Shown in pieces: positions 2,310-59,574 of a stretch of 64,000 nt of DNA. Within the stretch, counting starts at the first letter, position 1. Each line of letters begins with the position of its first letter. Below the pieces are notes generated by a model. It saw only the letters and a list, made by a program, of their open reading frames with translations, was not told where the DNA came from and did no database searches. This DNA comes from Sphyrna mokarran (lineage: Eukaryota), in NCBI GenBank assembly GCA_024679065.1, contig JAGIQG010000040.1:4030001-4094000 (forward strand), read 5' to 3'. Made by a program: the position numbers and the translations under genes.

Positions 2310-2345
<36 letters not shown>

Positions 2346-16166: not shown

Positions 16167-16208
16167 CTACAGTCACCATGGTCCCTTGTCCCCAATAGTC
16201 AAAGTATG
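16167..16208 (-). CDS. IGHJ: IgH J segment (YFDYWGQGTMVTV)
   Basis: WGXG motif; donor gtaaga at 16166; 23-RSS with heptamer 16209-16215 and nonamer GGTTATTGT 16239-16247. Confidence 0.96.
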
Positions 16209-16597
16209 CACAGTGTCACATTCCTTTGGTTGGGTCATACAATAACCGTCCCTGCACAAAATAGGCAGAAAAGCAGCCATTATTTTAAATATTCATAAAC
16301 CAAAGGAAAATCAATTAATATTCATGAAATTACTACTGTATTTGCATTTACAGTTCTCTCTACATAAATAACCTTAATGTTTTATATTTCACAGAGGATC
16401 ACATGATCAAGTTATTGAAAACACCAACTGATAATCAAATATTTATCAGGCATTTTCCATATTAATTCTCGCTATTTGTGTAGTGCTGTGACAAAAATAA
16501 TACAGCATGGTAAATAATGTTGGATTGTAAATCAGAGCACTGACCAGCCTCGGTCAATTAGTGCTGAAGGGTTTTTGCATTGACAGCAACAGTTGTG

Positions 16598-16609
16598 CTA
16601 ACCATTTAT
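16598..16609 (-). other. IgH D2 segment (ATAAATGGTTAG), 12/12 RSS
   Basis: 5' RSS: heptamer 16610-16616, 12-nt spacer, nonamer 16629-16637; 3' RSS: CACAACT 16591-16597, 12-nt spacer, GCAAAAACC 16570-16578. Confidence 0.9.
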
Positions 16610-16989
16610 CACAGTGAGACACAGCATGACAAATACTGAGTCTGACTACTAGCTGTAAAATACAGAGATTTAGTTTCACTTCTCTATCAAAAATTTGATC
16701 CTGTCTTTACTGAGAGTGAATATGTGAGATATTTCAGTTTGTGCAGGTCTTTATACCCATAAAAAGGATAGGAAAACTTTCAAACCCTTTGTGTAGTTTT
16801 AGCATTTCAGTCAACACAGATTTTTATGGAAAGATTCTTATACCTTTTCACAAACTAATATTACTTCTACATATTATTTAATTAAAGCCTCATTTACTTT
16901 GAAAATCCTGCTGTGGTACAGATTACCAATTTGAGCAATCTCTTTCCCTGAGGTTTTTGAATGAGGATGTCGCTGTGCTCAGCACTGTG

Positions 16990-17002
16990 ACCCCCCATCT
17001 AT
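16990..17002 (-). other. IgH D1 segment (ATAGATGGGGGGT), 12/22 RSS
   Basis: 5' RSS: heptamer 17003-17009, 12-nt spacer, nonamer 17022-17030; 3' RSS: CACAGTG 16983-16989, 22-nt spacer, TCAAAAACC 16952-16960. Confidence 0.93.
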
Positions 17003-17441
17003 CACAGTGACACACACGCGGACAAAAACTGCACTCATTCTCTGTTCAGTGCTGCCACTCAATATTCACTTCAAATAGACGATTATTCCTTATGTAATTT
17101 ACACTTCATGCAACTGATTACAAAACACAATCTACAAACATCTCCTGCAATCATCAGAAATATAAAAACGAGCATTATATCCAGCTGTGCAATTGCTGAA
17201 ACTGTTAACAGTAAATATAAACAGAGTGAAAATTTCAGCCCATTAGGTCTGTGTGTTTTCTTGGTTTAATGTTTAATTTTCACTAAGTTGGGTTTGTCAG
17301 AAGCAGGTTGTGCTTTGGTTCTGATCACTGTCGTTAGTGTTATATTTAAAACAGGTACTGAACTTCAGGTTATGATGGAAGTTGTTGAGATCCACCTCGA
17401 CCTGTTTTTGTCCGCGTCCATCCCTGGTTCCTCTTGCTGTG

Positions 17442-17740
17442 GTCTCTTGCACAGTAATAGATGGCGGTGTCTTCGATCTTCAGCCTCGTCATCTCCAAAG
17501 AGAAAGTGTTGTTTGAAGTGTTTTTGGACACAGTAAATCGATCTTTAATTGCTGGGGCATAGTCGTTGTTGGATGAACTATAGTACCAGAGCAACCACTC
17601 CAGCCCCTGTCCGGGAACCTGTCGGACCCAGTGCATGTAAGCGCTGCCAACATCGAAGCTGCTGGTTTTACAGGTTAGTTTCAGGGAGCCTCCGGGACGC
17701 CCAGTCGCTGCCTCTGGCTGAGTCAATACAATCTGGACAC
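17442..17740 (-). CDS. IGHV: IgM VH exon, open frame
   Basis: [50 protein letters not shown]; RSS CACAGCA (17435-17441), 23-nt spacer, ACAAAAACA (17403-17411). Confidence 0.97.
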
Positions 17741-17870
17741 CTGTAAAAATAAATTTTAAACACCGAGGATTAATCTTGGTGAAATGATTGCTGACTCTGG
17801 AACATTCCAGAAATAGACTAACATGGAGACAGTAACAGTGAAATTCCTGGACAATAAAAAAATTACTCAC

Positions 17871-17928
17871 CGGATAAGAAAGTCAGCAACAAACTGAGAG
17901 AAATCGCCGACCTCATCTTTCTGGTCAT
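17871..17928 (-). CDS. IGHV: VH leader exon ([19 protein letters not shown])
   Basis: Hydrophobic signal peptide, donor gtgagt at 17870; alternative ATG at 17916. Confidence 0.92.
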
Positions 17929-17939
17929 TTGAGGGAAAT

Positions 17940-18080
17940 GGTTGCGTCAGGAACTCAGTGAACAAAATAGCTCCCGGACCGTTGGATACCGGTACCAGTG
18001 AGCGGTATTTAAATACCCGGCAGAAGGGGGCGGCTTTCCAGGCGCAGGAGGTGGCGACTGGATCCACTTGCGTCTTCCAC
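17940..18080 (-). promoter_or_regulatory. VH promoter region
   Basis: TATTTAAATA at 18006-18015, CRE-like TGACGCA at ~17943-17949, E-box CAAGTG at ~18065-18070; no canonical octamer in this stretch. Confidence 0.6.
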
Positions 18081-18186
18081 GCCCAAATAGAATGGACCCC
18101 CAGATTTACAGAAGATTAATAGTAAAATGGACATTTTATATGTGTCGGGAGATTTGTTTGGCTGAATATGTTCGCTGTATTGTTTC

Positions 18187-22221: not shown

Positions 22222-24274
22222 TATAACATAGAGCATAAACATTACAGCACAGACATGCCCTTCGGCTTCGAGGTTGTACCAACCAAAATAAAATCACTGC
22301 CCTTCCAACTAAACCATTCCCTTCNNNNNNNNNNNNNNNNNNNNNNNNNNNNNNNNNNNNNNNNNNNNNNNNNNNNNNNNNNNNNNNNNNNNNNNNNNNN
22401 NNNNNNNNNNNNNNNCAAACTAAACCATTCCCTTCTCTTCCATATACTTATCAACTAACCTCTTAAACGCCACCAAACTTGGCGCATCTACAACAGCTGC
22501 AGGCAGGGCATTCCACTCCCTAATCACTCTTTGAGTAAAGAACCAACCTCTGATATCCGTCCTATAACTCATACCCCTTAATTTAAAGCTGTGTCCCCTC
22601 GTGCTAGCTTTCTCCATCCTAGGAAAAAGGCTATCACTGTCCACCCTATCTAAAACTCTAATCATCTTATATGTTTCGATTAGGTCCCCTCTTAGCCGCC
22701 TCCTTTATAACGAAAACAACCTCAAATCCCTCAGCCTCTCTTCATAAGACCTGCCCTCCATACCAGGCAACATCCTGGTAAACCTCCTCTGTACCCTCTC
22801 CAATGCCTCCACATCTTTCTTATAATGCGGGGACCAGAACTGCACACAATACTCCAAGTGCGGACGCACTAGAGTTTTGTACAGTTGCAACATGACGTTG
22901 CGGCTCCGAAATTCAATCCCCCTACCAATAAAAGCTAAGACTCCATATGCCTTCTTAACAACTTTATCCACTTGACTGCCTACTTTCAGGGATCTATTGA
23001 CACATACACCAAGAGCCTTCTGTTCCTCAACACTATTAAGCGCCCTACCATTAGCCCTATACTCTACACATTTATTGTTCCTGCCAAAGTGCATTACCTC
23101 ACACTTTTCCACATTAAACTCCATTTGCCACCTCTCGGCCCAGCTCTGAAACTTGTCCAAGTCACTCTGTAAACTATAACACCCCTCTTCACTATCAACC
23201 ACTCCACCAACTTTAGTGTCATCTGCAAATTTACTGATCCATCCCTCAATACCCTCATCCAGATCATTTATAAAAATTACAAACAGCAGGGGCCCCCAAA
23301 ACAGACCCCTGAGGTACACCACTTGTCACCGAACTCCACGATGAATATCTCCCATCAACCACCACCCTCTGTCTTCTATCTGCCAGCCAATTTCTAATCC
23401 AATTAGCTAAAGCACCCTCTATTCCACACATCTGCATTTTCTGTAGAAGTCTTCCATGGGCCACCTTATCAAAAGCCTTACTAAAGTCCATATATACTAC
23501 ATCAACCGCCTTACCCCCATCCACCTCTCTGGTCACTTTCTCAAAAAACTCAATGAGGTAGTAAGGCATGACCTACCCTTCACGAAACCATGCTGACTAT
23601 CCCCAATCAATTCATTTCTCTCTAAATAACTATAAATCCTATCCTAATAATTCTCTCCAATACTTTGCCCACAACAGAAGTAAGACTCACTGGCCTATAA
23701 TTCCCTGGAAGGTCTCTCTTCCCCTTCTTGAACAACGGGACCACATTCGCTATCCTTCAGTCCTCCGGAACCACACCCGTAACCAACGAGGACCTGAAGA
23801 TCAGAGCCAGAGGCTCTGCAATCTCCTCTCTGGCCTCCCAGAGAATCCTAGGGTAAATCCCGTCCGGCCCAGGGGACTTATCCAACTTCAAACCCTCGAG
23901 AATTTCTAACACATCCTCCCTATCTACTACAATACTTCCCAATTTGCAACCCTGTACCTCAGTGTTCTCCATCGCTACATTTCCAGCACTCTGCGTGAAT
24001 ACCGAAGAGAAATATTTATTCAGTACCTCACCAATCTCTTCAGGCTCCACGCACAACTTCCCACTGCTGTCTATGACTGGCCCTAATCTTGCCCTAACCA
24101 ATCTTCTATTCTTAACATATCGAAAGAAAGCTTTAGGATTCTCCTTAATCCTATAAGCCAACATCTTCTCGTGTCCCCTCTTAGCTCTCCTCAATTCACT
24201 TTTTACCTCCTTCCTGGCTAATCTATAGCTATCCATTGCACTAACTGAGCCTTCAAGCCTCATCCTGACATAAA
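22222..24274 (-). mobile_element. Young 5'-truncated CR1 LINE (RT)
   Basis: ORFs 22420-24263 are nearly identical to the RT at 41760-43442 (FADDTK; VYMDFSKAFDKV). Confidence 0.95.
22325..22415. other. Assembly gap (N run)
   Basis: 91 Ns; both flanks carry aactaaaccattcccttc. Confidence 0.99.
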
Positions 24275-24757: not shown

Positions 24758-24910
24758 TAGTACAAACACTGTCCAGGGGCCTGACAGCCACAGACATCCA
24801 GTATCTGCCAATAATGAATGCGCTGGCTTTACAGCTCACTCTCAGGGAGTCTCAGCGACGCCTTGTTTCTGCCTCCGGCTGAAGCAACACAACCTCCGAT
24901 TAGATACTTT
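24758..24910 (-). pseudogene. IGHV: IgH VH pseudogene, 5' half
   Basis: *SEVVLLQPEAETRRR*DSLRVSCKASAFIIGRYWM..(frameshift)..QAPGQCL; cut by CR1; its leader intron (25255-25345) matches 17758-17850. Confidence 0.85.
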
Positions 24911-24929
24911 TAAAAATATAAAAGAAAAA

Positions 24930-25250
24930 TATGCAAAAAGAATGCCACGCACCCCGAACATACTCTGTCACCTTTTTCCATCGTGATGATACAAAATCCT
25001 CAGGACATTTACAAACCGAGTCAAAAACAACTTCTCTCCTGCTGCAATCAGACCTTTGAAGGAACCTACCTCGCATTACGTTGATCTTTTTCTACACCCT
25101 AATTATGACTGTAACATTACATTCTGCACTCTCTACCTCCCTTCCTTTTGTATGATATGCTCTGTATAGTGCGCAAGAAAGAATAACTTTCACTGTGTGC
25201 TGATATGCATGATAATAATAAATCAAATTAAATCAAATCAAATCAAATTA
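24930..25250 (+). mobile_element. LINE 3' fragment with (AAATC)n tail, inserted in the pseudo-VH intron
   Basis: Interrupts intron homology; aataaatcaaat.. tail. Confidence 0.55.
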
Positions 25251-25629
25251 ATCAGAAACACCGAGGATTATTCCCGCTGAATTGATTGCTGACACTGGAA
25301 CATTCCAGAGACAGACTAATACTGAAGCAGTAAGAGTGAGGTCCATTGTAATGTCTCTCTAGTCCAAGAGATGAAATTGTATGTGATTATCTGTTATAGA
25401 AAAGAAACAATTTCATTGTAAGTTAAGTCCCTTCATTTCTGCAAGGAATAGACATAAACAAGATGGCATTTCAGTTTGATTTCCAATTACTCTATACATC
25501 TATCACATTGCAGCAAAATTATAACTTATTAGAAAAATTATTATTGATTTATGTAACTACATGTTTTGGGATGATTGTATTTCAGGTTTGAATAGCAATC
25601 AGTGTAATTTGGGATTGGATATAAGAAGA

Positions 25630-29500: not shown

Positions 29501-29532
29501 AAATTAAAAGTTAAATACATTTATTTTTATGG

Positions 29533-40354: not shown

Positions 40355-43300
40355 GATAGTTTAGAGATGAACAGAGAAAGGGATAGTTTGAACTCATGGC
40401 TGCGTGGATGGTGCAGGAGGGAGGGGTTCAGGTTCCTTAACAATTGGGACTCATTCTGGGATAGGTGGGACCTCTTCAAGAGAGATGGTCTACACCTGAA
40501 CCAGAGGGGGACTAATATCTTGGGGGGAAAATTTGCTAAGGCTATGATGGGGGCTTTAAACTGATTCGGGGGGGGTGGGATCCTAAGTAGTTGGGGTGCT
40601 GAGAGGGATGAGAGTAAGGGGGTTATAGAGGAGAGTTGTAAAACACAGCGGCGTACGGGTGGGGTGGGGCATGGTTTGAGATGCGTATACTTTAATGCAA
40701 GGAGTATTCGCAATAAGGGGGAGGAACTTGCAGCTTGGACCAGTACCTGGAACTTCGATGTTGTGGCCATTTCAGAGACTTGGGTAGAGCAGGGACAGGA
40801 ATGGATGTTGCAGGTTCCGGGGTACAAATGCTTTAGTCGGAGTAGAGAAGGAGGTAGAAGGGGGGGAGGAGTGGCGTTACTGGTCAAAGACTGTATCACG
40901 GTGATCGAAAAGAAGTTTGATGAGGACTTGTCTGTTGAGGTAGTATGGGCTGAGATTAGAAACAGGAGAGGAGAGGTCACCCTGTTGGGAGTCTTTTACA
41001 GACCTCCTAATAGTTCTAGAGAGGTTGAGGAAAGGATTGCAAAGTCAATTCTGATTAGGAGTGAAAGTAGTAGGGTAATTGTGATGGGGGACTTTAACTT
41101 TGCTAATATTGATTGGAATAGCTATAGCTCTAGCTCGTTAGAGGGGTCAGTTTTCGTACAGAGTGTGCAGGAAGGTTTTTTGACTCAGTATGTAGATAGG
41201 CCAACTAGAGGTGAGGCTACATTGGATTTGGTGCTGGGCAATGAGCCAGACCAGGTGTTAGGCTTGGAAGTTAGTGAACATTTTGGTGATAGTGACCACA
41301 ATTCGTTACGTTCACCTTAGTGATGGATAGGGATAGGCATGAAGCTGGGGGCAGTAGTTATAGCTGGGGGAAGGGTAATTATGAGGCCATCAGGAGAGAA
41401 TTAGGGTGCATAGATTGGACTAGGAAACTACAGGGACTGGGAACATCTGGAATGTGGTGCTTATTCAAGGAGCAGCTGCTGCGAGTCCTTGATAAGTATG
41501 TCCCTGTCAGGCAGGGAGGAAATGGACGAGTAAGAGAGCCTTGGTGTACGAAAAGAGTTGATTTGCTGGTTAAGAAGAAAAAGGAGGCTTATGTCAGGAT
41601 GAGGCTTGAAGGCTCAGGTAGTGCAATGGATAGCTATAGATTAGCTAGGAAGGAGGTAAAAAGTGAATTGAGGAGAGCTAAGAGGGGACACGAGAAGATG
41701 TTGGCTGATAGGATTAAGGAGAATCCTAAGCTTTCTTTCGATATGTTAAGAATAGAAGATTGGTTAGGGCAAGATTAGGGCCAGTCATAGATAGCAGTGG
41801 GAAGTTGTGCGTGGAGCCTGAAGAGATTGGCGAGGCACTGAATAAATATTTCTCTTCGGTATTCACGCAGAGTGCTGGAAATGTAGCTGTGGAGAGCACT
41901 GAGGTACAGGGTTGCAAATTGGGGAGTATTGTAGTAGATAGGGAGGATGTGTTAGAAATTCTCGAGGGTTTGAAGTTGGATAAGTCCCCTGGGCCGGACG
42001 GGATTTACCCTAGGATTCTCTGGGAGGCAAGAGAGGAGATTGCAGAGCCTCTGGCTCTGATCTTCAGGTCCTCGTTGGTTACGGGTGTGGTTCCGGAGGA
42101 CTGGAGGATAGCGAATGTGGTCCCATTGTTTAAGAAGGGGAAGAGAGACCTTCCAGGGAATTATAGGCCAGTGAGTCTTACTTCTGTTGTGGGCAAGGTA
42201 TTGGAGAGAATTATTAGGGATAGGATTTATAGTTATTTAGAGAGAAATGAATTGATTGGGGATAGTCAGCATGGTTTCGTGAAGGGTAGGTCATGCCTTA
42301 CTAACCTCATTGAGTTTTTTGAGAAAGTGACCAGAGAGGTGGATGGGGGTAAGGCGGTTGATGTAGTATATATGGACTTTAGTAAGGCGTTTGATAAGGT
42401 GGCCCATGGAAGACTTCTACAGAAAATGCAGATGTGTGGAATAGAGGGTGATTTAGCTAATTGGATTAGGAATTGGCTGGCAGATAGAAGACAGAGGGTG
42501 GTGGTTGATGGGAGATATTCATCGTGGAGTTCGGTGACGAGTGGTGTGCCTCAGGGGTCTGTTTTGGGGCCCCTGCTGTTTGTAATTTTTATAAATGATC
42601 TGGATGAGGGTATTGAGGGATGGATCAGTAAATTTGCAGATGATACTAAAGTTGGTGGTGTGGTAGATAGTGAAGAGGGGTGTTTTAGTTTACAGAGTGA
42701 CTTGGACAAGTTGCAGAGCTGGGCCGAGAGGTGGCAAATGGAGTTTAATGTGGAAAAGTGTGAGGTAATGCACTTTGGCAGGAACAATAAATGTGTAGAG
42801 TATAGGGCTAATGGTAGGGCTCTTAATAGTGTTGAGGAACAGAAGGATCTTGGTGTATGTGTCAATAGATCCCTGAAAGTAGGCAGTCAAGTGGATAAAG
42901 TTGTTAAGAAGGCATATGGAGTCTTAGCTTTTATTGGTAGGGGGATTGAATTTAGGAGCCGCAGCATCATGTTGCAGCTGTACAAAACTCTAGTGCGGCC
43001 GCACTTGGAGTATTGTGTGCAGTTCTGGTCGCCACATTATAAGAAAGATGTGGAGGCATTGGAGAGGGTACAGAGGAGGTTTACCAGGATGTTGCCTGGT
43101 ATGGAGGGCAGGTCCTATGAAGAGAGGTTGAAGGATTTGAGGTTGTTTTCGTTAGAAAGGAGGCGGCTAAGGGGGGATCTTATTGAAGCATATAAGATGA
43201 TTAGAGGTTTAGATAGGGTGGACAGTGATAGCCTTTTTCCTAGGATGGAGAAAGCTAGCACGAGGGGACACAGCTTTAAATTAAGGGGTATGAGTTATAG

Positions 43301-43537
43301 GACGGATATCAGAGGTAGGTTCTTTACTCAAAGAGTGATTAGGGAGTGGAATGCCCTGCCTGCAGCTGTTGTAGATGCGCCAAGTTTGGTGGCGTTTAAG
43401 AGGTTAATTGATAAGTATATGGAAGAGAAGGGAATGGTTTAGTTTGGAGGGGCATTGCTTTTTATTTTGGTCGGCACAACATCGAAGGCCGAAGGGCCTG
43501 TTCTGTGCTGTATTGTTCTATGTTCTATGTTCTATGC
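40355..43537 (+). mobile_element. Young CR1 LINE: ORF1 C-terminus plus essentially complete ORF2 (APE endonuclease-RT)
   Basis: RDGLHLNQRG (SGNH/GDSL esterase-like), YFNARSIRNK, ISETW, MGDFN, SDHN, FADDTK; (TTCTATG)n tail; two single-base frameshifts at ~41305 and ~41728. Confidence 0.96.
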
Positions 43538-44939
43538 ACTTCTGATGATTTTCATTTAGTCCATATTGGGTATTTATATTCCTGTATTGCACTTCGAAGT
43601 ATACATTTCTGAGAATAATTTATTGTCCAATATAGATTTTAAACACACTAACTCAAGAAATTATCTTGAACAGAAGGTGCACCCTGTTTTATTACAATGG
43701 CTCCTTTCAATTCTTCATGATTTTCCAATTTCTTTTGCACTTGTTCAGCCAGTTCAATAATGCAAATTGGTGGATTCCGTATTTATTTTGGTAATATGCA
43801 ACTCACTATTGTTGATGGAGAATGGAACAATGGTTGCTAACCTCACCGGAATGTTGTTTTCACCTCATTGTCTCTTCCAGAAATAGGGTAGAGTTCCACT
43901 TTTCCTCACCTTGCAAGCACCGACTCACAATCATTGGATCATCCTCAGCATTCCAAGCAGACCAATGTGATATCGCAACTCAGCTTATCTAATTGTCCTT
44001 TTCACCTTCAGTATTCAAAAGGGAGCATTTACTCCTTCCCAATACTCAATAGTTTCTCTTTCCCGAAGTACCTTCACACTGACGGAGAGGAAATGCAACA
44101 CTTGTCTTCTCCCACAGCTATTTTCAGCACCCAAGGCAAAAAAAAGCTTCAGATGAAACAATGATTTCTTTGAATGTCTTTCCAATTAATATTTTGTTCT
44201 TGGCTTATGGTGCAGTCCACTCTGCACTTTGTTCACGAGGCATTGAAAAAGAGAAACATAGAAAATAGCAGAAAGAGATGGCTATTCGGCCCTTCGATTC
44301 TGCTGCGCCATTCATTTTTATCACGTTGGCCTCAACTACTTCCTGTGGTCGCGAATTCCACTGGTTCACCACTCTCTGAGTCAACAGACTTCTCAGCCTT
44401 GAAGCAACTCAGTCGTAAATGATTTATGCCTTATTCTCAAAGTACGTCCCTTCGTTCTAGATGCCCCCACATTGGGAAAATTCTTTCCGAATCTACTCTG
44501 TCTAATTCTGTTAAATTGACTGAATAATTTGTAGTGCACCTCTAATCAATCCACAAGTGCGAGCCTGTGGTTCTGATTATTTGTCCCCTTCTATCACTAT
44601 TTGGTTCCAAGTTTATTTCCCTGCGTTTGGCATCCTTTAATAATCCATTTAACTCACAATAAAATTGAAGAATTCCACCTGTTTTTCTCCCCCTTTTGAA
44701 CATTTTGCTTGACTGAATAAGAAGTTTTTTTAAAAAAAAATCAATTGGCTCCCTCTATCTTTTTCTTTTTTTATCTCCTTTGATTTTTTTTGTATATGTT
44801 GGTGACAATTCCGGCATTTATATTGATATATTACCAGGCATCCGTGTTGCAGCGTTAATGCTCCAGTCTCACATCATTTTGTTTTTCACCATCACTGCTT
44901 CAGACATATACTCTTCCCTGCCTTCTAATTAATCACAAA

Positions 44940-45620
44940 CATACGCTTCTGTACATTCAGCACTGCACTAACACACTTCACCTCCACGCCAGCCCACACA
45001 CAAAACAAAGGTAAAGACACAGACATAAATATACAAAACATAGACAAAGAACACATGGACGCATAGACAGGCACATATACATACGCAGGCGCGTGCGCGC
45101 GCGCACACACACGCAAATGCACATTCGCAAATACACACACACATACACGCAAATACACATTAGCAAGCACAAACATACATAAGCACACACAGATGCCCAA
45201 ATATACAGACACCTCTAAATGCACACAAACAGGCATGTGCACACAAAAACACTCGGACACATGCATGCAAAAGAATACAAATGCAAATAAAGATATGCAG
45301 GGAAACACACACATATGATTTTGCATACAAATGCGCACACAATCACATGGGCACACACATAAAGACACGCACATGAACACGCATATACAGCCACACATAA
45401 AGCCACACAAACACATGGATGCATGAGCGCACATGCAGACACACATATTCAGACTTCAACAAACACAGATACACTCTCAAGGGAAAACACATAGAAACAC
45501 ACACAAAATACATGCACAACAAAACGCACGCACACACGTACACAAACACAAGGTGCATGCATAAGCGCACATATACACAAAAATATGCACGCACAAAATT
45601 GCACAAGACAAACATACAGT
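44940..45620. repeat. Degenerate (CA)n low-complexity tract
   Basis: Imperfect CA/CATA/CGCA repeats. Confidence 0.9.
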
Positions 45621-47546: not shown

Positions 47547-47619
47547 GCCCGGCTAGCTCAGTCGGTAGAGCATGAGACTCTTAACCTCAGGGTCGTGGGT
47601 TCGAGCCCCACGTTGGGCG
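47547..47619 (+). tRNA. tRNA-Lys(CTT) with a T39C variant
   Basis: GCCCGGCTAGCTCAGTCGGTAGAGCATGAGACTCTTAACCTCAGGGTCGTGGGTTCGAGCCCCACGTTGGGCG; intact A and B boxes; TTTT about 14 nt downstream. Confidence 0.92.
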
Positions 47620-48038
47620 CTGTTATTCTAAAATTTTGCTGCTTTCCTGGGTGAACTCCATTTCTCTGGAAGTGTCGCTGTCAATGTTGTTTTGTTAATA
47701 CCTCTATTTTCTGGATGGAACGTGCCTCCGCTCCTTTGGAAGTCGGACAGTTTAGTGCTTAATTCAGTGAGAATGTATTTTTTAATTATTTAGCACCAGA
47801 TTTGAACCCAAATCGGAAAATATTTATGTCAATGGAAAAAAGAATCTGCTCCATTATTAGCCAGATTTTATGTTGTATCATCATCTCTATCGTCAGAGTT
47901 TTGTAACCTATCACTGTCCTTTTACTGTTCTTCATTATCTGAACATGACATTTTCAACACAACGCAAAATGGTATATCTGCCGTACTGACACACATAACT
48001 AATTAAATAATAGTTTTTGCGTAACAATAAGTATTAAA

Positions 48039-48110
48039 TTTCCTAACTGGGAATCGATCCCAGGCCGCAAAGGTAAAAGCACTGAACTCAAACCGCTAGG
48101 CCACAAGGGA
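48039..48110 (-). pseudogene. tRNA-Glu(TTC)-derived pseudogene
   Basis: TCCCTTGTGGCCTAGCGGTTTGAGTTCAGTGCTTTTACCTTTGCGGCCTGGGATCGATTCCCAGTTAGGAAA; many stem mismatches. Confidence 0.75.
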
Positions 48111-49922
48111 AGTTACTGCATCTGCTTTCAAAAATCTAATTGATGTGTCAAACTTTTGCCTTTGATTTTTCCTTTCAGACGTTGTTTTACACCAGAAACA
48201 GGGATTTTGCTTCAAATTGTCATTTTTTCGGCATGAGAAAATTGACTTCTTAACCAATGAAATCATGGATACCGATAACTAGAACATGAAATGACCAGTA
48301 AAGTCAAATAAGATACTGATGTACAGCTTCCAATTTCCAAGCCTCAGCGCCTTCATCACTGCAAATTCTAAAAAAAACCGAGACTGTTGGCTAAAAACAT
48401 CACGGTAGAGAAGGGACAATACAGGATTGGTCTCAAAAAGGCAATACTGAGTTGTTATATGTATTAATTGTTTGCACATTCGCTTCTACAACTGAATAAT
48501 CGCGGCAAGACAAGATAGACATCCGTCACTGAAAGAAATTGACAGATTCTATTTTAAACACTTCCATGTCACATTTCTTTCTGTTCCTGTTGCTGCCTCT
48601 GCGACAGCTGCCTCTGGCTTTGCTAGGGCTCCTTGATGCTACATTCGGTCGAATGCAGCCTTGATGTCAGCGGCTGTCACTCTCACCTCTCCTCTGGAAT
48701 TCAGCACTTTCGTCCGTGTTTGAACCAGGGCTGAGTGGCCCTCGCGAGACTTAAACTGGGCGTCACTGAGCAGGTTATTGCTGAGCAGGTGCTGCTGAAT
48801 TGCACTGGTGATGACCCTTCCATCACTTTACAAAGATCGAGAGTAGACTGATTTAGCAGTAATTGGCTGGGTTAGATTTGTCCGGCTTTTTTTTGTCAAG
48901 TTGGGTAGATGCCAATGTTGCAACTGTACTAGAAGAGCTTGGCTTGGGTAGTGGCAAATTCTGGAGCAAAAGCCTTGAATACTATTGCAGGAATAATATC
49001 AAGGCCCATTGCCTTTACAGTATCCAGTGTCTCCGACCATTCCTTGATACCACGTGGTATGAATCGAATTGGCTGGAATCTGCCATCTGAGATCCTGGGA
49101 ACCAATGGAGGAGCCCGAGATGGTTCATCCACTCAACACTCAATGCCACAGAAACTTCAGCTTTATTTTTTTGAATGGGTGTGCTGGGCTCCTCCATCAT
49201 TTAAGATGGGGGTATTTTTGGAGTATCCTCCTCGAGTGAGTTGTTTAATTGACCATCAACATTCTCGCTTGAATGTGGATGGGCTGTAGATCTTAGGTCT
49301 CATCCGTTGATAGTCGGATCATTCCAGTCAGGGAATGAAGATATTTTGTTTTTTTGCAGAAGACGAGTTAAATGAAATTGGAATCATTTTCTGATCGAAA
49401 ACATGAGTGATATTGGTGTCTCTGACTCTGGAGTTCGTCACAACAAAGCAGAGATGAAGGTCTTCTTTCACGGATGGGTCACTTGGTGGCGCAGTGACTC
49501 CTTCACTGAAGGACTTTTTACTCAAATACAACCCAGATGGGACGAAAGGGAAATACCTGTCTGGGAAAGGGGGAAAAGCGTGTAATAAAAAATGAAACAG
49601 TGTCGAAGGGCTTTGAAGAAAGGAGTTCGGCAAGTTCATAATTTGCTCATTTTTCATTCAAAATTTATTAAAAGTTTCAGAGAATATTTTACAGAAAAGT
49701 TTATTTAAACGATAACGAAAGAGAATACAACAATTGATCTTCACATTGAGAAGACAATCCATACGCTCTGAACAGTCCAACATATATACAACTCTAACAG
49801 ACACAAGAAAGAATAAGCAGGAGCTCAACACATTGGGAAATGAACAACTGTGAATTAGAAACGCGAAAGGGTACTTATTTATACACGAAATTGCAAGTAC
49901 AGGGAAACTAGTAACTTCAATT

Positions 49923-50135: not shown

Positions 50136-50459
50136 CATAGCAACAAAAATTACCTCGTTCATTTCACACTGAAACACCGTCCACGATTGTCTCAGTTGCA
50201 GATTCAGAATGATAAACAGAATTTTACTGTTGCAGTCAACAACAGCAGATATTGCATTTGTGTTATAGAAAGAGCCTGCATTAGCTGAGGGAAATCTACA
50301 GCATCCAAAATTCAGCCCGTCGCTTGATCTGTAAAAAGAGATAAAATAAAAAAGAAGACGTTTTTGATCTGGGGAATTAATGTTAGTGTTTTAATCAGTG
50401 AAACATTTAGTCATTTTTCAAGCCGTTTCTGTCAAACCGTTCACTATAAGTGGATTGAA

Positions 50460-50596
50460 TCATCTTATCTTCACCAGACGGACTGCGGTGCTGTAGAAAA
50501 TGCTCCCGAAGGTCAGAATGATGAATGTGGAAGCAGTTGCCCAGATGTTGCCGTTATCATCTTCATTGTCTTCAATCCAGATACGGTCGGTGGAGA
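50460..50596 (-). pseudogene. Orphan IgH transmembrane exon
   Basis: STDRIWIEDNEDDNGNIWATASTFIILTFGSIFYSTAVRLVKIR*; acceptor AG changed to GG, donor GT changed to AT; flanks 50164-50640 align with window 1-490; no CH exons nearby. Confidence 0.88.
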
Positions 50597-51355
50597 CCAG
50601 AGAATGTAGACAAGAAAATAGAATTAAGTGGTTTTATTTATCCGAGTTTTTTTTTTAGTTCTCGGTTTCTTTGCGTGTATCCTTCAGTTTCATTAAGTTT
50701 TAATCTTTCTTTCTGTGTATCTGTGTAAATTTCCAGCATTCAGGCTTTATTTTTAAGGCCGGATTATTTCATGAGGAAAGGTTAGAGAGACAAGGTTTAT
50801 ATCCACCGGAATTCAGAAAAAGAGTAGGCTACTTGATTGATATGCATAAAATACAAAGGGATCTTGACAAGGTGGATATGAAGACGATAGTTTCTCTTCT
50901 GCGTGAATCTATAATTAGGTACCACTGTTTCAAAATAGGGATTCGCCCATTTAAAATAACACTGCACCACAGCCTCCTCTAATGTATATCTGTATTTATA
51001 AATACTGGTCAGTAGCAATGTCCTTCCTTGGTGCAAATAACAATGGGAAACGAAACATAAACTTTTTAACTAGTAGCTGCTCTCTCTCTCTCTCTCTCTT
51101 TCACTGATCAACCTTTCAGTCTGATGGGATTCTGCTGTGTTTTGTCTCAGCCGATCCTGGATTGAATTGGGTGACAGTTTGATCCGAGGTTAATGTGGTT
51201 TCCTCTGGGCGTGTGTCAGAGCGGCTAACAGCGTCGCTGCTCAATCTGGCTGTTACATACTGCGGCTCTCTACACAAACCTCAACAGACTAGAGCACCCA
51301 ATGATAGCTGCAAAGCAGTTTTTGTACGGGGGTGAGACTGCTTTCTATCACTGTG

Positions 51356-51922
51356 AGTCTGAAAGCGCAGTACTAGTGGCCAGCGTCAGTCAGCTGCAGG
51401 TTCGAGGTGGTTCACCTAGTTAATTTAGCCGAGGTCTGGAGATCAGCAGAGAAATTGGGTCCAAAACCTTCCCCTCTGTCTTGTGTATCTAAGGAGGTTT
51501 TCCATATAATGAACTGCAAATCGTTCTGTGACTGCTGTCTATACCAGTATAAGATATATTCACTTGCTGTAGTGCTGTAGGTACATCGGATAGTCACCGT
51601 TTCACCTTCAATCCCTTCTAAAGACTGCGGTTGAGAAACAGAATCTCCATCACTCGGATCTGTAACGTGTTCAAGAAGAAGAAAAAAAATCTAAGTATTG
51701 GACGTGCTGCTGAAATAATATTAACACTTTATATTCATCGCGACATAAACTGGAGTTACGAAATAAAAGCAAATGGTAGTGAAAATACACAGCAGGGTCA
51801 AGAACCACCACTGGAGAGAAGCAGAGCTAAAGGTTCAGATCGCGGTAACATTTAACCAGATTGGAGTCATTCTTACTGATAAGAAACAGCCCGAACACAA
51901 TGCAGATGGTGAGGAACTCCAT
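51356..51922 (-). pseudogene. TCR alpha/delta V pseudogene (leader 51877-51922, V exon 51356-51659)
   Basis: MEFLTICIVFGLFLI / GDSVSQPQS..ETVTIRCTYSTTAS..LYWYRQ..FSADLQTS..R*TTSNLQLTDAGH*YCAFR; near-consensus RSS CACAGTG (51349-51355), 23-nt spacer, ACAAAAACT (51317-51325). Confidence 0.9.
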
Positions 51923-54075: not shown

Positions 54076-54083
54076 AAAAACAT

Positions 54084-54156
54084 AGGCTCCAGCGACAATT
54101 GATCTTGCGACCCCTGGTTTACTAGACCAGCGCTCTAACCATTGAGCTATAGAGCC
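54084..54156 (-). tRNA. tRNA-Thr, anticodon AGT, probable pseudogene
   Basis: GGCTCTATAGCTCAATGGTTAGAGCGCTGGTCTAGTAAACCAGGGGTCGCAAGATCAATTGTCGCTGGAGCCT followed by TTTTT; T-arm and B box degenerate. Confidence 0.75.
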
Positions 54157-55235: not shown

Positions 55236-55332
55236 AAATTTCCAGCATTAACTCAATGTCTGAATGATCAGTACCTGTTCCCTGATCTCTCTCCACCCCA
55301 CGATATTTAATGCCTTCTGTGTTTTGTTACAG

Positions 55333-55624
55333 GGATAAACAGTGTTTCAAGATCGAACTAAATTAAGCATTCTGGAAGGACAGAGCATATTGTTGGACTG
55401 TAATTATTCGACAGTTGCTTCTCAAACTATATTCTTGTACATCCGCTATCCCCGACAAGTCCTGAGGTATATGATGAAGATATATAGCTTGGGCAATACC
55501 GACAAGTCTCCGGATTTATCGGATAGTTTCTCGGCTGCTTTGCACAAAGCAAACAACAGTTTACTTTAAAAATCACCAGGATTCTTCTGCCTGACCGCGC
55601 CCTGTATTTCTGTGCCATGGAGCC
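55333..55624 (+). pseudogene. TCR alpha/delta V pseudogene
   Basis: VFQDRTKLSILEGQSILLDCNYST..FLY (Trp lost)..FSAALHK (frameshift) TLKI..ALYFCAMEP; RSS CACACTG (55625-55631), 23-nt spacer, ACAAAAGCG. Confidence 0.85.
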
Positions 55625-56821
55625 CACACTGTGCAGAGATATAGCGAGCTCCTCACAAAAGCGCCAGACTGGAAGTTCCGCGTAAAGATCAGCAGAGGGC
55701 GCTCCCGCACGGATAGACAGAAACAATTATTTCGTCTTCACAGGGAGAGTCACAGGATCATAAATGAAATATCAAAACAAAACAGACCACTCAACATGAA
55801 CAGCTATGCCGCAGTTGAGTTTTTAACTTGCAACTATACAAAAAATAGAGTTATATTTCACTCACGCGTAGTTCTTTGACGATATTCCCTTGCCTGTGTG
55901 AATTACTGTATAGCACTTTCCCCATCTTGACTCCCCGTTTCGAGGCCGCTTTACTCAAAGAGTCTACTTTGTAATCTCTATACCGGAGGGAGCGTTAAGG
56001 ACACATTAGTAAGTTAGACAATTCTTTATTAGAGCATTGATAGGGAACGAGAAGCTGCGATGGAAATTGAATTTGAAGAGAGAAATGGCTAAATAGTTAG
56101 CCAACCATCTTACGAAGGAGCAGCGCTCCGAAAGTTTGTGACACCAACTAAAATTGTTGGACTTTAACCTGGTGCTGTGAGACCTCTTACTGTGCCCACC
56201 TCAGTCCAACTCTGGCATCTCCACATCATCGACAAATATTTAGCCAGTAAATGGAAATTTTAAAAAGGGGTAATTTTGGAAGCAGATAGATGATTAGGAA
56301 TAAATGGATAATTGTTTAAGAGCGACAGGAAGTAAGTAAGCGGCCGAACATTCTAACCGTGTGCTGTGAAATATTATGATTCTAAGATAATGAAGTGTTC
56401 TGTTCATGTAGAAAAACAAAAGTGAACAGAACTGATGAAAGAAATTATTCTGTTACATACAGGAAGCAAAGAAATTCGGAAGCAGTGACGGTTCAAGTGG
56501 TCCTTGGTTTGACAAAACCAATTGTTCAGTGGCACCATGAATAACGTCAGATAACAACATCATTTATAGACCATTCGGTGATATTCAGCTCTCCTTCCCC
56601 TGCCCACCATTCAGATTCCCGACCTCGGCTGTAAGTCCAGTCTAGAAATCAGATCCGGATTGATCCTCATTTGCACCTTCATCATCATGAAGGCAAACAC
56701 GCGCAAACACTTGTTTTCAGATACTGCTAGTGTTGTGTGAGTTTATCCACTTATTCAGATGCATTATTTTAACAGTCTGTTAATACCGTGTAGTTTATGA
56801 GTGATTTTGTTCTGTTCACAG

Positions 56822-57093
56822 TCGTTCATGTGAGGAATGAAACTCCCATCCTGAGTCAGTAATGCCTCAGAAAGAGAGACGGGTTGAAATGAACTGCCTG
56901 CTCCCCTTTGTGATACCATGGTCTGGTACAGACAAAAACCGACAGGGGCTCCGCCATTTATCGCCTCCCTTTACGAAGGGAATGTAAACGAATGTAAACA
57001 TACTGTCCTTTGACCAAGTAAAGAATTCAAATCCAGTCTCTATAGATGACAGCGCGGTCCAGGACTCGGGGATGTATCTCTGTGCGAAGCAGA
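56822..57093 (+). pseudogene. Decayed TCR V pseudogene
   Basis: RVEMNC..MVWYRQKPTGAPPFI..AVQDSGMYLCAK, with stops and frameshifts; degenerate heptamer CGCAGTG at 57094-57100; decayed leader at ~56687-56740. Confidence 0.75.
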
Positions 57094-57578
57094 CGCAGTG
57101 AGACGAAGAATGGGGCCGGTTGTAAATATCTTATTAAACACCCTGTCTCCACTGGAATTTTAAATTGGCCCCAAAACAGTACCTTTCAAAATGCCGGTGG
57201 TATTAGAGCTATGACTTTCCCGTGCTTATACTTGAATCTGGATAGAGTCGCAATATCTGACAATTGTCATTACAGATGCAGTGTGTCGAAACATTTTGAG
57301 TAAACTCTCTTGTTCCGTTGTTCCACACACAAAGTAAAGAGAGTCGGGAAAAATAACTGCTTCTCTGATGCCGAGGCAGATGGATAGGCGAGAGAAAAAT
57401 ATCTAAACATGGATGGAAAAAGATGGAAAGGGAGATAATAAGTAGATCGGTAGAGAGAGTCAGAAAGACGGATGGATCGGTAGTCGCATAGATTAGCTAA
57501 TTCTAACCATTTACGGGAACACTTCATTTATTTATTCTTGTATATATCTTTATGTTAGTTTTGTGTTTGGTTTCACAG

Positions 57579-57790
57579 CTGTTTCTTATCACTCAGGCAC
57601 ATTTCAGATTCCGATGAATCTGGTTAAACAAGGACAGACCATCTCTCTTCACCACAATGTTACTGTCGCTGCAAATGACTGTGTATTCTGGTATCGGCAG
57701 TTCAGCGATCAAATTCCCAAGTATACTTTGGTAATGGTGCAGGCGCGTCAGAAAACTGAGATAAAGGATTTTGCATCAATACTAACCAGC
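57579..57790 (+). pseudogene. Truncated TCR V fragment
   Basis: Acceptor tttcacag; VKQGQTISLHHNVT..VFWYRQFSDQIPKY; first Cys lost; no YYC or RSS. Confidence 0.6.
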
Positions 57791-58014
57791 AAATGTTGCA
57801 AAACCAAAATGACAAAGACGGCAGATATAGCGATAACATCAAAGTAATAAAACATATGATAAACTGCAACAATAAAAACCCGCAATACGATGCAGCAACA
57901 TAAACCAGATTGAAAGTCGCTGTTTCACTGATGACGTCCCAAGACCCCATCTTTCGCAAAACCTTGCAGAGCCGTCAGTTTCCCCTGTCACAGGTGACAG
58001 CTGGAGTTACAGGA

Positions 58015-58275
58015 AACGGGACAGTGGTTAACACTGTTACCTCACACACCAGGGACCCGGGTTCGATTCCTGTCCGTGTGACGTTTGGACTTTCTCCCGC
58101 TATCTGCGTGGGTTTCCTCCGAGTGCTCCGGTTTCTTCCCACAGTCCGAAGGACGTTAGCTGCATACTGAATTCTCCGTCAGTGTACCGAATAAGCGCCT
58201 TAGTGTGGCGACTAGGGAATTTTCACTGTAAATTGATTGTGAATGTAAGCCTCATTTGTGAGTAATACATTTTAC
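58015..58275 (+). mobile_element. tRNA-derived SINE (V-SINE/HE1-like)
   Basis: cagtggttaacac..gacccgggttcgattc..gtgggtttcctcc. Confidence 0.75.
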
Positions 58276-58692
58276 TTTCAATATCTGAACGTCTTGACAC
58301 CACCACAAACCACAGCGCATTTAATGCAAGAGATGATATGTAAATTACGGAAGATCTCGAGCAGAAACATTTCTTCTGGACCAGAAACTCTGGATCCATC
58401 TCCACTTCATGACGGCAGAGGATGTGTTCCTTACCCTGACACACAAATTGATGATCTACTTGTACATTCTTCCAATCAGCCGAATGACACGTTAAAAGAA
58501 CGGGGGGGCGGGGGTTCCTGCAAGAGTTATTTTTAGAAATAAAACATTTATTGTAATTAATAGTCTGAGAATTCACCAGGATTTCAGTTTCCATTTCAGA
58601 CTCACTCTGATCACAATGTTTGTCTACCGCTCTATGTTGAGCGAGGTTCTGACAGTTTTTGTACAGACGCAGCCCAGGTCTGTATCTCTGTG

Positions 58693-58990
58693 GGACTCAG
58701 TGCGCAGTAATACACCCCGGAGTCTGCCAGCCCTGTTTTAGACACTTTCAACGGGACGGTGCGGGTTGTATCATTGATCTCTGCTGAAAAACGGTTCCCA
58801 GGAGATCTCCCTGTGTTTCCAAATTTATTTGTTTGGAGCAGATACTCCATGGTCTCGTTGGGATACAGACGGTACCAGAATAGAAAAGGGTTGTTGCTTG
58901 TAGTTGTATAATTACAGAACAATTGAACATCATCTCCTTCAGTGACGGTGACTGCTGTTTTTTGCGAAACAGAATCTCCTTGACAATGCC
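58693..58990 (-). CDS. TCR alpha/delta V exon, open frame
   Basis: GHCQGDSVSQKTAVTVTEGDDVQLFCNY..LFWYR..RFSAEI..LADSGVYYCALSP; RSS CACAGAG (58686-58692), 23-nt spacer, ACAAAAACT (58654-58662). Confidence 0.93.
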
Positions 58991-59522
58991 CTGTTAGAGC
59001 ACAAAATAAATATAAACTAAACAATGCGATTTCACTCTGTTTCCCTCAGAATCTTCCCGTAATCCTGAACAATAATTTTAGAGAGAAATCAAACAGAAGA
59101 ACAAAAGCATATTTTTCACAATTCAGTAGTTGGAACGGGAAGGTATTTATAGTGATAATAAAACTTCTACCGAAAACATTCAGTACCTTCTAACGAAATC
59201 AGTTCCTCCCCTTTAGTCCCTGTAACTGGAGCGGGAAAATGTTCACTGTCTGTATTTGAAAGTCTGGTTATTTTTCAAATCATTTACTGGTACCAGAGAA
59301 ATTTGAATCGCAGCCTAAACTCATCCAATCTCATTCCCTGAGGAAAATGTGCCAACTCCCAACAAACAGTTTTCAGTATTAACACCGAGATCCAAGTACC
59401 TATTCGAGGTTGGGATCAATCCGATCACTCACTCTTAGCCCCTTGCATTGAGTGGACAGCCCGATAGAATGTAATTTGTGGTAATGATGTGCAACACAGA
59501 ATTCAGCAACTTGTGAACTTAC

Positions 59523-59574
59523 CAGTTAAAAGAGCTGCCGCTATGACGATTAAATACAGAGTAACAGGAGACAT
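59523..59574 (-). CDS. Leader exon of the TCR V (MSPVTLYLIVIAAALLT)
   Basis: 52-nt phase-1 exon with donor gtaagt; splices in frame to 58990. Confidence 0.87.

What the first reader, a model, noticed from the sequence alone, without database searches (positions are those of the whole stretch)
16167..59574. Intact TCR alpha/delta V lies co-oriented ~42 kb upstream of an intact IgM D-D-J-Cmu: possible TCRV-IgM chimeric receptor
Seen: a complete IgM cluster on the minus strand, and an intact leader plus TCR V (58693-59574) on the same strand. The V's 23-RSS faces the 12-RSS of D1 (17003-17030) and of D2. Established: RAG follows the 12/23 rule, and sharks use IgH V segments in TCR-delta chains. 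Inference: simple deletional joining could give the reciprocal product, TCRV-D-D-JH-Cmu, an antibody or BCR chain with a TCR V domain. I do not know of this product having been described. The linkage also gives a cis route for this VH, or VH-D1 with its 22-RSS, to join TCR-delta D/J segments if they lie nearby.
Basis: partly seen in the sequence, partly recalled or inferred. Interest (0 to 1): 0.85.

Follow-up and report, generated by a model that had tools for sequence, protein, structure and literature searches.

The report
Shark IgM cluster beside TCR V
A complete shark-type IgM antibody gene cluster lies about 42 kb from an intact T-cell-receptor V gene, an arrangement already published for sharks and rays; whether the two are ever joined into a hybrid receptor is still an untested idea.

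Summary
On the minus strand there is an intact IgM minicluster, which also has its own VH 0.4 kb from D1: VH, D1, D2, JH, Cmu1-4 and TM1. About 41.7 kb upstream lies an intact, co-oriented TCR alpha/delta-type V with a 23-RSS. By the 12/23 rule, V-to-D1 or V-to-D2 joining by deletion is allowed.

The arrangement is not new. Flajnik et al. 2025 (PMC12227049, sections read) report TCR-alpha/delta-type V exons between IgH clusters in four elasmobranchs. This scan's first readers also noted it in other windows of the same genome.

The hybrid TCRV-D-D-JH-Cmu chain could not be tested: no RNA run was listed, so read laying was not usable. Evidence against a real role:
- The cluster's own VH is the nearest partner.
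- 3 of 4 TCR-type V elements here are defective and 2 of 4 are inverted.
- Unrelated genes and an IgM relic lie between V and cluster.
- Nurse-shark IgH joins almost only within a minilocus (PMC2435157).

The N gap sits in a LINE tail between VH and the TCR V. Its flanks overlap by 18 nt and are colinear, so continuity is plausible but not proven.

Verdict: an ordinary piece of the known elasmobranch antigen-receptor complex; the chimera is speculation.

The parts
58654..59574 (-). Intact TCR alpha/delta-type V gene segment. Leader exon 59574-59523, intron 59522-58991, V exon 58990-58693, 23-RSS 58692-58654 (CACAGAG, 23-nt spacer, ACAAAAACT).
   Evidence: Sequence and translation. Pfam V-set, E 3.3e-12. 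52 of the 60 PDB rows shown carry a T-cell-receptor name, 7 are antibody constructs and 1 is unnamed. Best protein relatives are 56% identical (Chiloscyllium punctatum), and one named hit is a lizard TCR alpha chain. RSS pattern: 3 hits against 0 in 100 shuffles.
17403..17928 (-). Intact VH of the IgM cluster. Leader 17928-17871, intron 17870-17741, V exon 17740-17442, 23-RSS 17441-17403 (CACAGCA, 23-nt spacer, ACAAAAACA).
   Evidence: Pfam V-set, E 3.6e-19. Best shark hits: Mustelus asterias 87% over 62% of the query, and Scyliorhinus torazame 79%.
16952..17030 (-). D1 (17002-16990), with a 5' 12-RSS at 17030-17003 and a 3' 22-RSS at 16989-16952.
16570..16637 (-). D2 (16609-16598), with a 5' 12-RSS at 16637-16610 and a 3' 12-RSS at 16597-16570 (CACAACT, 12-nt spacer, GCAAAAACC).
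   Evidence: The 3' RSS was read by eye.
16167..16247 (-). JH (16208-16167, YFDYWGQGTMVTV, GT donor at 16166), with a 23-RSS at 16247-16209.
   Evidence: It is the only J-like motif with an upstream heptamer in the window.
6892..7191 (-). Cmu1 exon (300 nt, phase 1).
   Evidence: Pfam C1-set, E 1.1e-13.
5621..5926 (-). Cmu2 exon (306 nt).
   Evidence: C1-set, E 2.9e-18.
4399..4707 (-). Cmu3 exon (309 nt).
   Evidence: C1-set, E 1.6e-10.
3509..3900 (-). Cmu4 exon with secretory tail. Stop codon at 3511-3509, AATAAA just after it, and an internal GT at 3570 as a candidate donor for the membrane form.
   Evidence: C1-set, E 1e-19.
317..444 (-). Cmu TM1 exon (..WTTASTFIFLFFLSIFYSTAVTLVKV).
   Evidence: TM2 was not seen; the window ends 316 nt further on.
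22325..22415 (.). Assembly gap (91 N) in the 3' tail of a CR1-like LINE copy (minus-strand ORF pieces 22420-24263), between the VH and the TCR V.
   Evidence: The flanks overlap by 18 nt and are colinear on other LINE copies.
51317..51920 (-). TCR-type V pseudogene. It has a leader, a V exon with two in-frame stops (TGA, TAG) and a perfect 23-RSS at 51355-51317.
55333..55663 (+). TCR-type V pseudogene on the opposite strand. It has a frameshift, an early stop and no Trp41. RSS-like site at 55625-55663.
57563..57847 (+). Truncated TCR-type V fragment on the opposite strand (..VFWYRQ..; Cys23 position lost; breaks off in FR3).
50192..50643 (-). Relic of a second IgM cluster. A TM1-like exon at 50588-50466 is 73% identical in protein to the intact TM1. 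Nucleotide homology to 35-491 is 75%.
   Evidence: No Cmu1-4 relic was found elsewhere in 18201-64000.
24780..25340 (-). Truncated VH pseudogene. It keeps leader-intron homology (81% to 17747-17841) and FR1-CDR1 with a stop, then is cut off by a repeat insertion.

Best explanation
The window is an ordinary stretch of the elasmobranch antigen-receptor complex. In that region, self-contained IgM miniclusters are interleaved with TCR alpha/delta-type V segments, repeats and unrelated genes.

The IgM cluster most likely works on its own. RAG joins VH, D1, D2 and JH, which all lie within 1.76 kb, and the product is spliced to Cmu1-4, with either the secretory tail or TM1.

The intact V at 58.7 kb is most likely a normal TRAV/TRDV segment. 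It would be used by long-range rearrangement with TCR delta D/J or alpha J segments that lie outside the window.

A V-to-D1 or V-to-D2 joint with the IgM cluster is allowed by the 12/23 rule and by orientation. I expect it at most as a rare by-product, not as a receptor class.

Shown: the anatomy, the intactness of the segments, the RSS types and the orientation. Inferred: which partners are used in vivo.
For: Anatomy and intactness. RSS types and the chance test.

The V is of TCR type:
- 52 of 60 PDB rows shown are T-cell receptors.
- A 53%-identical relative, P0003, is a rearranged V-J-C chain with an FGAGTRLIV J motif.
- P0003's nearest Atlas clusters are TCR-alpha-chain clusters, score 0.95.

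No TCR J or C, and no second J of any kind, is in the window.

Unchecked first-reader notes place IgM clusters beside or inside TCR V arrays in the same genome. They lie 0.43 Mb before this window, and 1.0, 1.06 and 1.36 Mb beyond it.

Cluster autonomy (PMC2435157, passages):
- The four segments rearrange within the minilocus.
- The 97 partial rearrangements were within one minilocus, 'with one possible exception'.
- Only 1 apparent interlocus joint was found among 58 thymic VDD-J clones.

No sign of a dedicated V-IgM architecture:
- 3 of 4 TCR-type V elements are defective and 2 of 4 are inverted.
- The interval holds a 7tm_1 ORF, tRNA genes, LINEs, a truncated VH and a TM1 relic.
Against: - Nothing here shows what the 58.7-kb V actually joins to. 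No RNA run was listed.
- By consensus match, its RSS (heptamer 6/7, nonamer 8/9) is no worse than that of the cluster's own VH (heptamer 5/7, nonamer 8/9).
- The nurse-shark assays used VH-side primers (my reading of the passages), so they could not have seen a TCR V joined to D1.
- In nurse-shark thymocytes IgH segments are widely cut by RAG: 44 of 48 single thymocytes had rearranged bands. DNA joints between TCR V and IgH D segments are therefore conceivable there.
- The distance is 42 kb, shorter than the 120 kb or more between nurse-shark IgH loci.
Confidence: 0.75

Rival explanations
1. RAG joins the 58.7-kb TCR V to D1 (or D2) of the IgM cluster by deleting about 41.7 kb. This gives a TCRV-D-D-JH-Cmu chain that is expressed as a B-cell receptor or antibody.
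For: - Same strand; the V 23-RSS faces the D1 and D2 12-RSS; V and cluster are both intact.
- The V's RSS is at least as close to consensus as the VH's.
- There is no strict order of joining in shark IgH, so D1-D2-JH intermediates with a free 12-RSS exist (PMC2435157).
- The opposite chimera (IgM or IgW VH on TCR delta) is established in sharks (reviews and PMC12227049).
- An Atlas cluster named 'IgMV5 /TRDC' appeared among the structure hits for P0003.
Against: - No junction evidence was obtainable.
- Of the 5 of 11 relatives of this V that I read, the only rearranged one (P0003) carries an FGAG-type J, not JH-Cmu.
- The cluster's own VH is 100 times closer to D1.
- Long-range IgH recombination in shark B cells is 'rare, if it exists' (PMC2435157).
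- In thymus, where IgH is widely cut, Ig transcripts were not detected.
- 3 of 4 neighbouring TCR-type V elements have decayed.
- Pairing of a TCR V domain with Ig light chains is untested.
- Eight full-text searches found no report of such a product.
Confidence: 0.05
2. The linkage is an assembly artefact. The IgM cluster (left of the N gap) and the TCR V region (right of it) come from different places and were joined by scaffolding inside a repeat.
For: - All Ig-cluster parts lie left of the gap and all TCR-type V elements lie right of it.
- The gap sits in a young LINE family, about 96.5% identical between copies. Assemblers break and misjoin at such places.
Against: - The flanks share an exact 18-nt overlap and are colinear on two other LINE copies. 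This is what two ends of one insertion would look like.
- Ig relics also lie right of the gap: a truncated VH at 24.8-25.3 kb, and a Cmu-TM1 relic at 50.2-50.6 kb about 0.7 kb from a TCR V pseudogene's RSS. Ig and TCR elements are therefore interleaved without crossing the gap.
- The same interleaving is published and noted in other windows.
Confidence: 0.06
3. The 58.7-kb V is an orphan. It is intact by chance or by youth, and is used by neither TCR nor Ig.
For: - Its three neighbours are pseudogenes.
- No D, J or C of a TCR is in the window.
- No RNA holder was listed.
Against: - The leader, both splice sites, all three hallmark residues and a good RSS are kept.
- The read-through of the RSS (..SPTEI..QKLSE) is similar in germline relatives from bamboo shark and elephant shark. 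That suggests a conserved signal in this V family.
- A blank is not evidence of silence.
Confidence: 0.12

Closest known systems
Elasmobranch antigen-receptor complex (Flajnik et al. 2025, Sci Adv, PMC12227049; outline, sections 6 and 15 and passages read)
   Same: IgM miniclusters on the same chromosome stretch as TCR alpha/delta-type V exons, with such V exons lying between IgH clusters. The authors already use the proximity to explain VH-to-TCR-delta rearrangement.
   Different: The parts of the paper I read do not discuss a TCR V joining an IgM cluster. Its coordinates are in table S1, which I could not see, so I cannot say whether this very locus or species is listed. The best VH matches here are to Mustelus and Scyliorhinus.
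Nurse-shark IgM heavy-chain miniloci (Malecek et al. 2008, PLoS Biol, PMC2435157; passages read)
   Same: [quoted passage not shown] RSS types allow any order of joining.
   Different: In that species the loci were thought to be at least 120 kb apart with unknown neighbours. Here the neighbours are visible, and they include TCR-type V segments. The J-Cmu1 intron is about 9 kb here, against 6.3-6.8 kb quoted there.
Ig-TCR chimeric chains of sharks: IgM/IgW VH on TCR delta, TAILV, NAR-TCR (Criscitiello 2006, 2010; Deiss 2019; known to me only through citing texts)
   Same: A V of one receptor class is used with D/J/C of the other, and close linkage makes this easy.
   Different: The known chimeras put an Ig-type V on a TCR constant region in T cells. 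The proposal here is the mirror image: a TCR-type V on Cmu. I found no report of it. The original papers were not held, so a negative or positive test of the mirror image in them would have escaped me.
Interlocus V(D)J joints in mammals (for example PMC2191748, JEM 1994; search listing and start of abstract only)
   Same: RAG joins segments of different antigen-receptor loci at low frequency when their RSS are compatible.
   Different: Those joints are rare by-products between distant loci or chromosomes. Here the partners are 42 kb apart in cis.

Membership tests
Elasmobranch IgM heavy-chain minicluster | One VH with split leader and a 23-RSS | tested here: met
   Leader 17928-17871, V exon 17740-17442, RSS 17441-17403. 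V-set, E 3.6e-19.
Elasmobranch IgM heavy-chain minicluster | Two D segments, D1 with 12- and 22/23-RSS and D2 with 12- and 12-RSS, plus one JH with a 23-RSS | tested here: met
   The D2 3' RSS has a weak heptamer (CACAACT), read by eye.
Elasmobranch IgM heavy-chain minicluster | V, D, D and J packed within about 2 kb | tested here: met
   17928 to 16167 is 1.76 kb.
Elasmobranch IgM heavy-chain minicluster | Four Cmu exons, a secretory tail and transmembrane exons downstream | tested here: met
   Four C1-set exons in phase. Secretory tail with stop and AATAAA. TM1 present. TM2 not seen before the window ends.
Elasmobranch IgM heavy-chain minicluster | Rearranged and expressed in B cells | not testable with these tools
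   No RNA run was listed.
TCR alpha/delta V gene segment | Split leader, and a V-set exon with Cys23, Trp41 and Cys104 | tested here: met
TCR alpha/delta V gene segment | 23-RSS at the 3' end | tested here: met
   58692-58654.
TCR alpha/delta V gene segment | Closer in sequence to TCR alpha/delta V than to Ig V | tested here: met
   52 of 60 PDB rows are T-cell receptors, but the margin is small: best TCR 58.9 bits, best antibody construct 53.7 bits. A named lizard TCR alpha chain is among the 11 hits. Relative P0003 sits with TCR alpha clusters. The constant-region part of P0003 matched antibody constant domains best in PDB, so it gave no isotype.
TCR alpha/delta V gene segment | Found joined to TCR J and C in cDNA | not testable with these tools
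Ig-TCR chimeric receptor chain | A somatic junction or transcript joining a V of one class to D/J/C of the other | not testable with these tools
   No reads were available. Of the 5 of 11 relatives read, none carried JH or Cmu.
Ig-TCR chimeric receptor chain | Compatible RSS and orientation of the partners | tested here: met
   A 23-RSS against a 12-RSS, both on the minus strand.
Elasmobranch antigen-receptor complex (AgRC) | TCR alpha/delta-type V exons between IgH clusters | tested here: met
   Reading along the minus strand, the order is: TCR V elements at 59.6-51.3 kb, a Cmu-TM1 relic at 50.6-50.2 kb, a truncated VH at 25.3-24.8 kb, and the intact cluster at 17.9-0.3 kb. The part left of 22.3 kb depends on the gap join.
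Elasmobranch antigen-receptor complex (AgRC) | Linkage to the TCR alpha/delta constant genes and PSMB5 | not testable with these tools
   Outside the window. Only unchecked notes point to TCR-like constant exons megabases away.

The most novel reading that the evidence does not exclude
In this shark, a fraction of IgM heavy chains carries a TCR alpha/delta-type V domain. The domain would be made by cis deletion from V segments interleaved with the IgM clusters, and it would be expressed and selected in B cells. That would be the mirror image of the VH-TCR-delta chains.
Probability: 0.04. Interest if true: 0.85.

Novelty: new member of a known kind. Interest (0 to 1): 0.3.

Why it matters
If TCR V segments were really used on Cmu, the division of V repertoires between B and T cells would be leaky in both directions in the oldest jawed vertebrates. 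That would bear on how Ig and TCR loci separated.

As it stands, the window only adds one more well-resolved example of the published interleaving of IgM clusters and TCR V segments. It also gives exact coordinates, RSS types and primer-ready sequences for the simple PCR or RACE test of the idea.

Tried and rejected
- **RNA test.** The look-up of sequencing runs on the V exon listed no run. Read laying was therefore never called and the junction test could not be made.
- **Other copies of the locus.** I could not identify the species or see another assembly.
- **Protein databases.** The TCR V query gave 11 hits among 12 candidates, the best at 56% identity. I read 5 of the 11. Three of them (P0001, P0002, P0006) are germline V read-throughs. 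One (P0003) is a rearranged V-J-C chain. None has JH or Cmu. This is a very weak negative, because the species itself seems absent from the database.
- **P0003's constant part.** Pfam gave only a sub-threshold C1-set hit. PDB gave antibody constant domains first. Only the Atlas placed the chain with TCR alpha clusters. My impression that it resembles C-alpha is recall, not a result.
- **Promoter clue.**
  - No perfect octamer lies within 430 nt upstream of the TCR V or within 500 nt upstream of the VH, so this does not discriminate.
  - A 7/8 match abuts the TCR V start codon, read by eye.
- **Search for TCR D, J or C, or further Cmu exons.** None was found. In one search my Cmu4 query was in the wrong frame; one search repeated it correctly.
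- **Literature.**
  - Eight full-text searches returned no paper describing a natural TCR V on an Ig constant region in cartilaginous fish.
  - Criscitiello 2010, Ott 2021, Deiss 2019 and Hsu 2016 were not held. They may contain such a test.
  - I did not ask for supplements; the task says they are closed. Table S1 of PMC12227049 may list this locus.
- **Germline RAG footprint, considered and dropped.** I asked whether the TM1 relic next to the TCR V pseudogene could be such a footprint. The pseudogene keeps its whole RSS, so the sequence gives no support.

Full report
**What is there: the TCR V.**
- The start codon is at 59574. The leader exon is 52 nt (59574-59523), followed by a 532-nt intron and a V exon at 58990-58693.
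- The V exon reads GHCQGDSVSQ...LFCNY...FWYRL...GVYYCALS.
- The signal follows directly: CACAGAG, a 23-nt spacer, ACAAAAACT, at 58692-58654.

**What is there: the IgM cluster.** The cluster is also on the minus strand and is complete.
- VH: leader 17928-17871, V exon 17740-17442, 23-RSS 17441-17403.
- D1: 17002-16990, with a 12-RSS on the 5' side and a 22-RSS on the 3' side.
- D2: 16609-16598, with a 12-RSS on each side.
- JH: 16208-16167, with a 23-RSS.
- Cmu1 7191-6892, Cmu2 5926-5621, Cmu3 4707-4399.
- Cmu4 3900-3509, with a secretory tail and a polyadenylation signal. TM1 444-317.
- All internal exons keep phase 1. I translated the exons one by one and made no joined protein.
- Pfam gives V-set for both V exons and C1-set for each of the four C exons.

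**Chance.** The signals are far beyond chance. A 23-RSS pattern hits three times, each at a V coding end, against 0 in 100 shuffles. A 12-RSS pattern hits at D1 and D2 only, against 0 in 100 shuffles.

**The gap.** There is one run of 91 N at 22325-22415.
- It lies between the VH and the TCR V, just 3' of the ORF2 stop of a CR1-like LINE copy whose ORF pieces run 22420-24263 on the minus strand. No exon of either receptor gene is touched.
- The last 18 nt left of the gap are identical to nt 3-20 right of it. Both flanks align in the same order, overlapping by about 20 nt, to two other copies of this LINE in the window.
- That is what two unmerged contig ends of one insertion look like, so continuity is plausible. 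It is not proof, because the family is young (about 96.5% identity between copies).
- I filled nothing and took no letters for the gap.
- The Ig/TCR interleaving does not rest on this join alone. Right of the gap there is a truncated VH at about 24.8-25.3 kb. Its leader intron is 81% identical to that of the intact VH, and its FR1-CDR1 carries a stop.
- Also right of the gap is a Cmu TM1-like exon at 50588-50466 (73% protein identity; 75% nucleotide identity over 450 nt). It lies only about 0.7 kb downstream of a TCR V pseudogene's RSS.

**What kind of V it is.**
- Of the 60 best PDB rows, 52 are named T-cell receptors (nearly all alpha chains), 7 are antibody constructs and 1 is unnamed. The margin is small: 58.9 against 53.7 bits.
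- In the 5.8-billion-protein search, only 11 of 12 candidates passed. The best were 56% identical (Chiloscyllium punctatum), and one hit is named a lizard TCR alpha chain.
- I read 5 of the 11.
  - Three (P0001, P0002, P0006) are germline V read-throughs. Their translated signals resemble this one (..SPTEI..QKLSE), which suggests a conserved RSS in the family.
  - P0003 (53% identical) is a rearranged V-J-C chain with FGAGTRLIV.
- P0003's nearest Atlas clusters are TCR alpha chain clusters, score 0.95.
- Pfam and PDB did not type P0003's C domain.
- I therefore call the V TCR alpha/delta-type.

**Surroundings.**
- The window holds four TCR-type V elements, and only the one at 58.7 kb is intact.
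  - The one at 51.9-51.3 kb (minus strand) has a leader and a perfect RSS but two stops.
  - The one at 55.3-55.6 kb (plus strand) has a frameshift and an early stop and lacks Trp41.
  - The one at 57.6-57.8 kb (plus strand) is a truncated fragment.
- There is no TCR D, J or C, no second J, and no other Cmu1-4 exon.
- Between the V and the cluster lie several unrelated elements.
  - LINE copies.
  - Two tRNA-Lys genes and a further tRNA match.
  - A 300-codon rhodopsin-type receptor ORF at 36043-36942, with two in-frame stops just upstream in what should be TM1.
- An unchecked first-reader note describes a TCR V with nested CR1 insertions 310 nt beyond the window's end.
- Other unchecked notes describe IgM clusters beside or inside TCR V arrays in the same genome. 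They lie 0.43 Mb before the window and 1.0, 1.06 and 1.36 Mb beyond it. Further notes describe IgM/GPCR/tRNA mixtures about 6 Mb away. I could not check these notes.

**What is known.**
- Flajnik et al. [quoted passage not shown] They also state that the proximity supports VH-to-TCR-delta rearrangement.
Their coordinates are in table S1, which I could not see.
- Malecek et al. 2008 (PMC2435157; passages) report the following for nurse shark.
  - The four segments rearrange within the minilocus, in no strict order.
  - Only 1 of 58 thymic VDD-J clones was an apparent interlocus joint.
  - Long-range recombination in B cells is 'rare, if it exists'.
  - IgH is widely but incompletely rearranged in thymocytes (44 of 48 single cells), without detectable Ig transcripts.
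- Their primers sat on the VH side (my reading), so a TCR V joined to D1 would not have been seen.

**The proposed chimera.**
- The geometry allows it. The V and the cluster share a strand, a 23-RSS faces a 12-RSS, and about 41.7 kb would be deleted, including the cluster's VH.
- The V's signal matches the consensus at least as well as the VH's.
- I could not look for junctions.
- Eight full-text searches found no report of a natural TCR V on an Ig constant region in cartilaginous fish. Four key papers were not held.
- Several points weigh against a real role.
  - The VH is 0.4 kb from D1, against 41.7 kb for the TCR V.
  - IgH miniloci are autonomous in the one species studied.
  - The neighbouring V elements have decayed or are inverted, and unrelated genes lie in the interval.
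  - In thymus, where both partners are likely to be open to RAG, Cmu is not transcribed.
- I put a functional TCRV-Cmu chain at about 4-5%. Rare non-selected joints are more likely, but they would be by-products.

**Species.** The VH is closest to partial entries from Mustelus asterias (87% over 62% of the query) and Scyliorhinus torazame (79%). This suggests a ground shark (Carcharhiniformes) or a relative. That group assignment is my recollection of where these two genera belong, not the result of a call. No protein of the window itself was in the database.

**Verdict.** The arrangement is a further example of a published kind. The hybrid receptor is an untested idea with low prior odds, and it would be easy to test at the bench.

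Noticed in passing
window 50192-50643 (-): A lone Cmu TM1-like exon, open over 41 codons and 73% identical to the intact TM1. It has about 450 nt of flanking homology and sits about 0.7 kb downstream of the RSS of a TCR V pseudogene. No Cmu1-4 relic is nearby. It looks like the tail of a lost upstream IgM cluster.
   Followed up: partly
window 24780-25340 (-): A truncated VH pseudogene, with leader-intron homology and FR1-CDR1 carrying a stop. It lies about 7 kb upstream of the intact VH and is cut off by a repeat insertion.
   Followed up: partly
window 36043-37000 (-): An intronless rhodopsin-type receptor ORF (Pfam 7tm_1, E 3.6e-22) with two in-frame stops where TM1 should be. It is probably a pseudogene or starts downstream. 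Unchecked notes mention a GPCR family interleaved with IgM clusters elsewhere in this genome.
   Followed up: partly
window 47547-47620 (+), 48038-48111 (-), 54084-54156 (-): Two tRNA-Lys genes (CTT and TTT anticodons, ARAGORN) in opposite orientation 0.4 kb apart, between the IgM relic and the receptor ORF. Rfam confirms the first and adds a third tRNA match at 54.1 kb.
   Followed up: no
window 16340-16347: A perfect octamer (ATGCAAAT read on the minus strand) lies between D2 and JH. None lies within 500 nt upstream of the VH start codon.
   Followed up: no
window 40664-43442 (+), 60880-62999 (-), 22420-24263 (-): Three copies of one CR1-like LINE family with long open reverse-transcriptase ORFs, about 96.5% identical where compared. 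This is a young and possibly active family. The assembly gap sits in the tail of one copy.
   Followed up: partly
window 1600-2600 and 44900-45600: Long CA/TG-rich simple-sequence tracts give spurious ORFs of 170-240 codons. One of them lies in the Cmu4-TM1 intron.
   Followed up: no
P0003 (database protein): Among the Atlas structure neighbours there is a cluster automatically named 'IgMV5 /TRDC (Fragment)'. So the known direction of chimera (IgM V on TCR delta C) is represented in public protein sets. No cluster named for the mirror image appeared.
   Followed up: no
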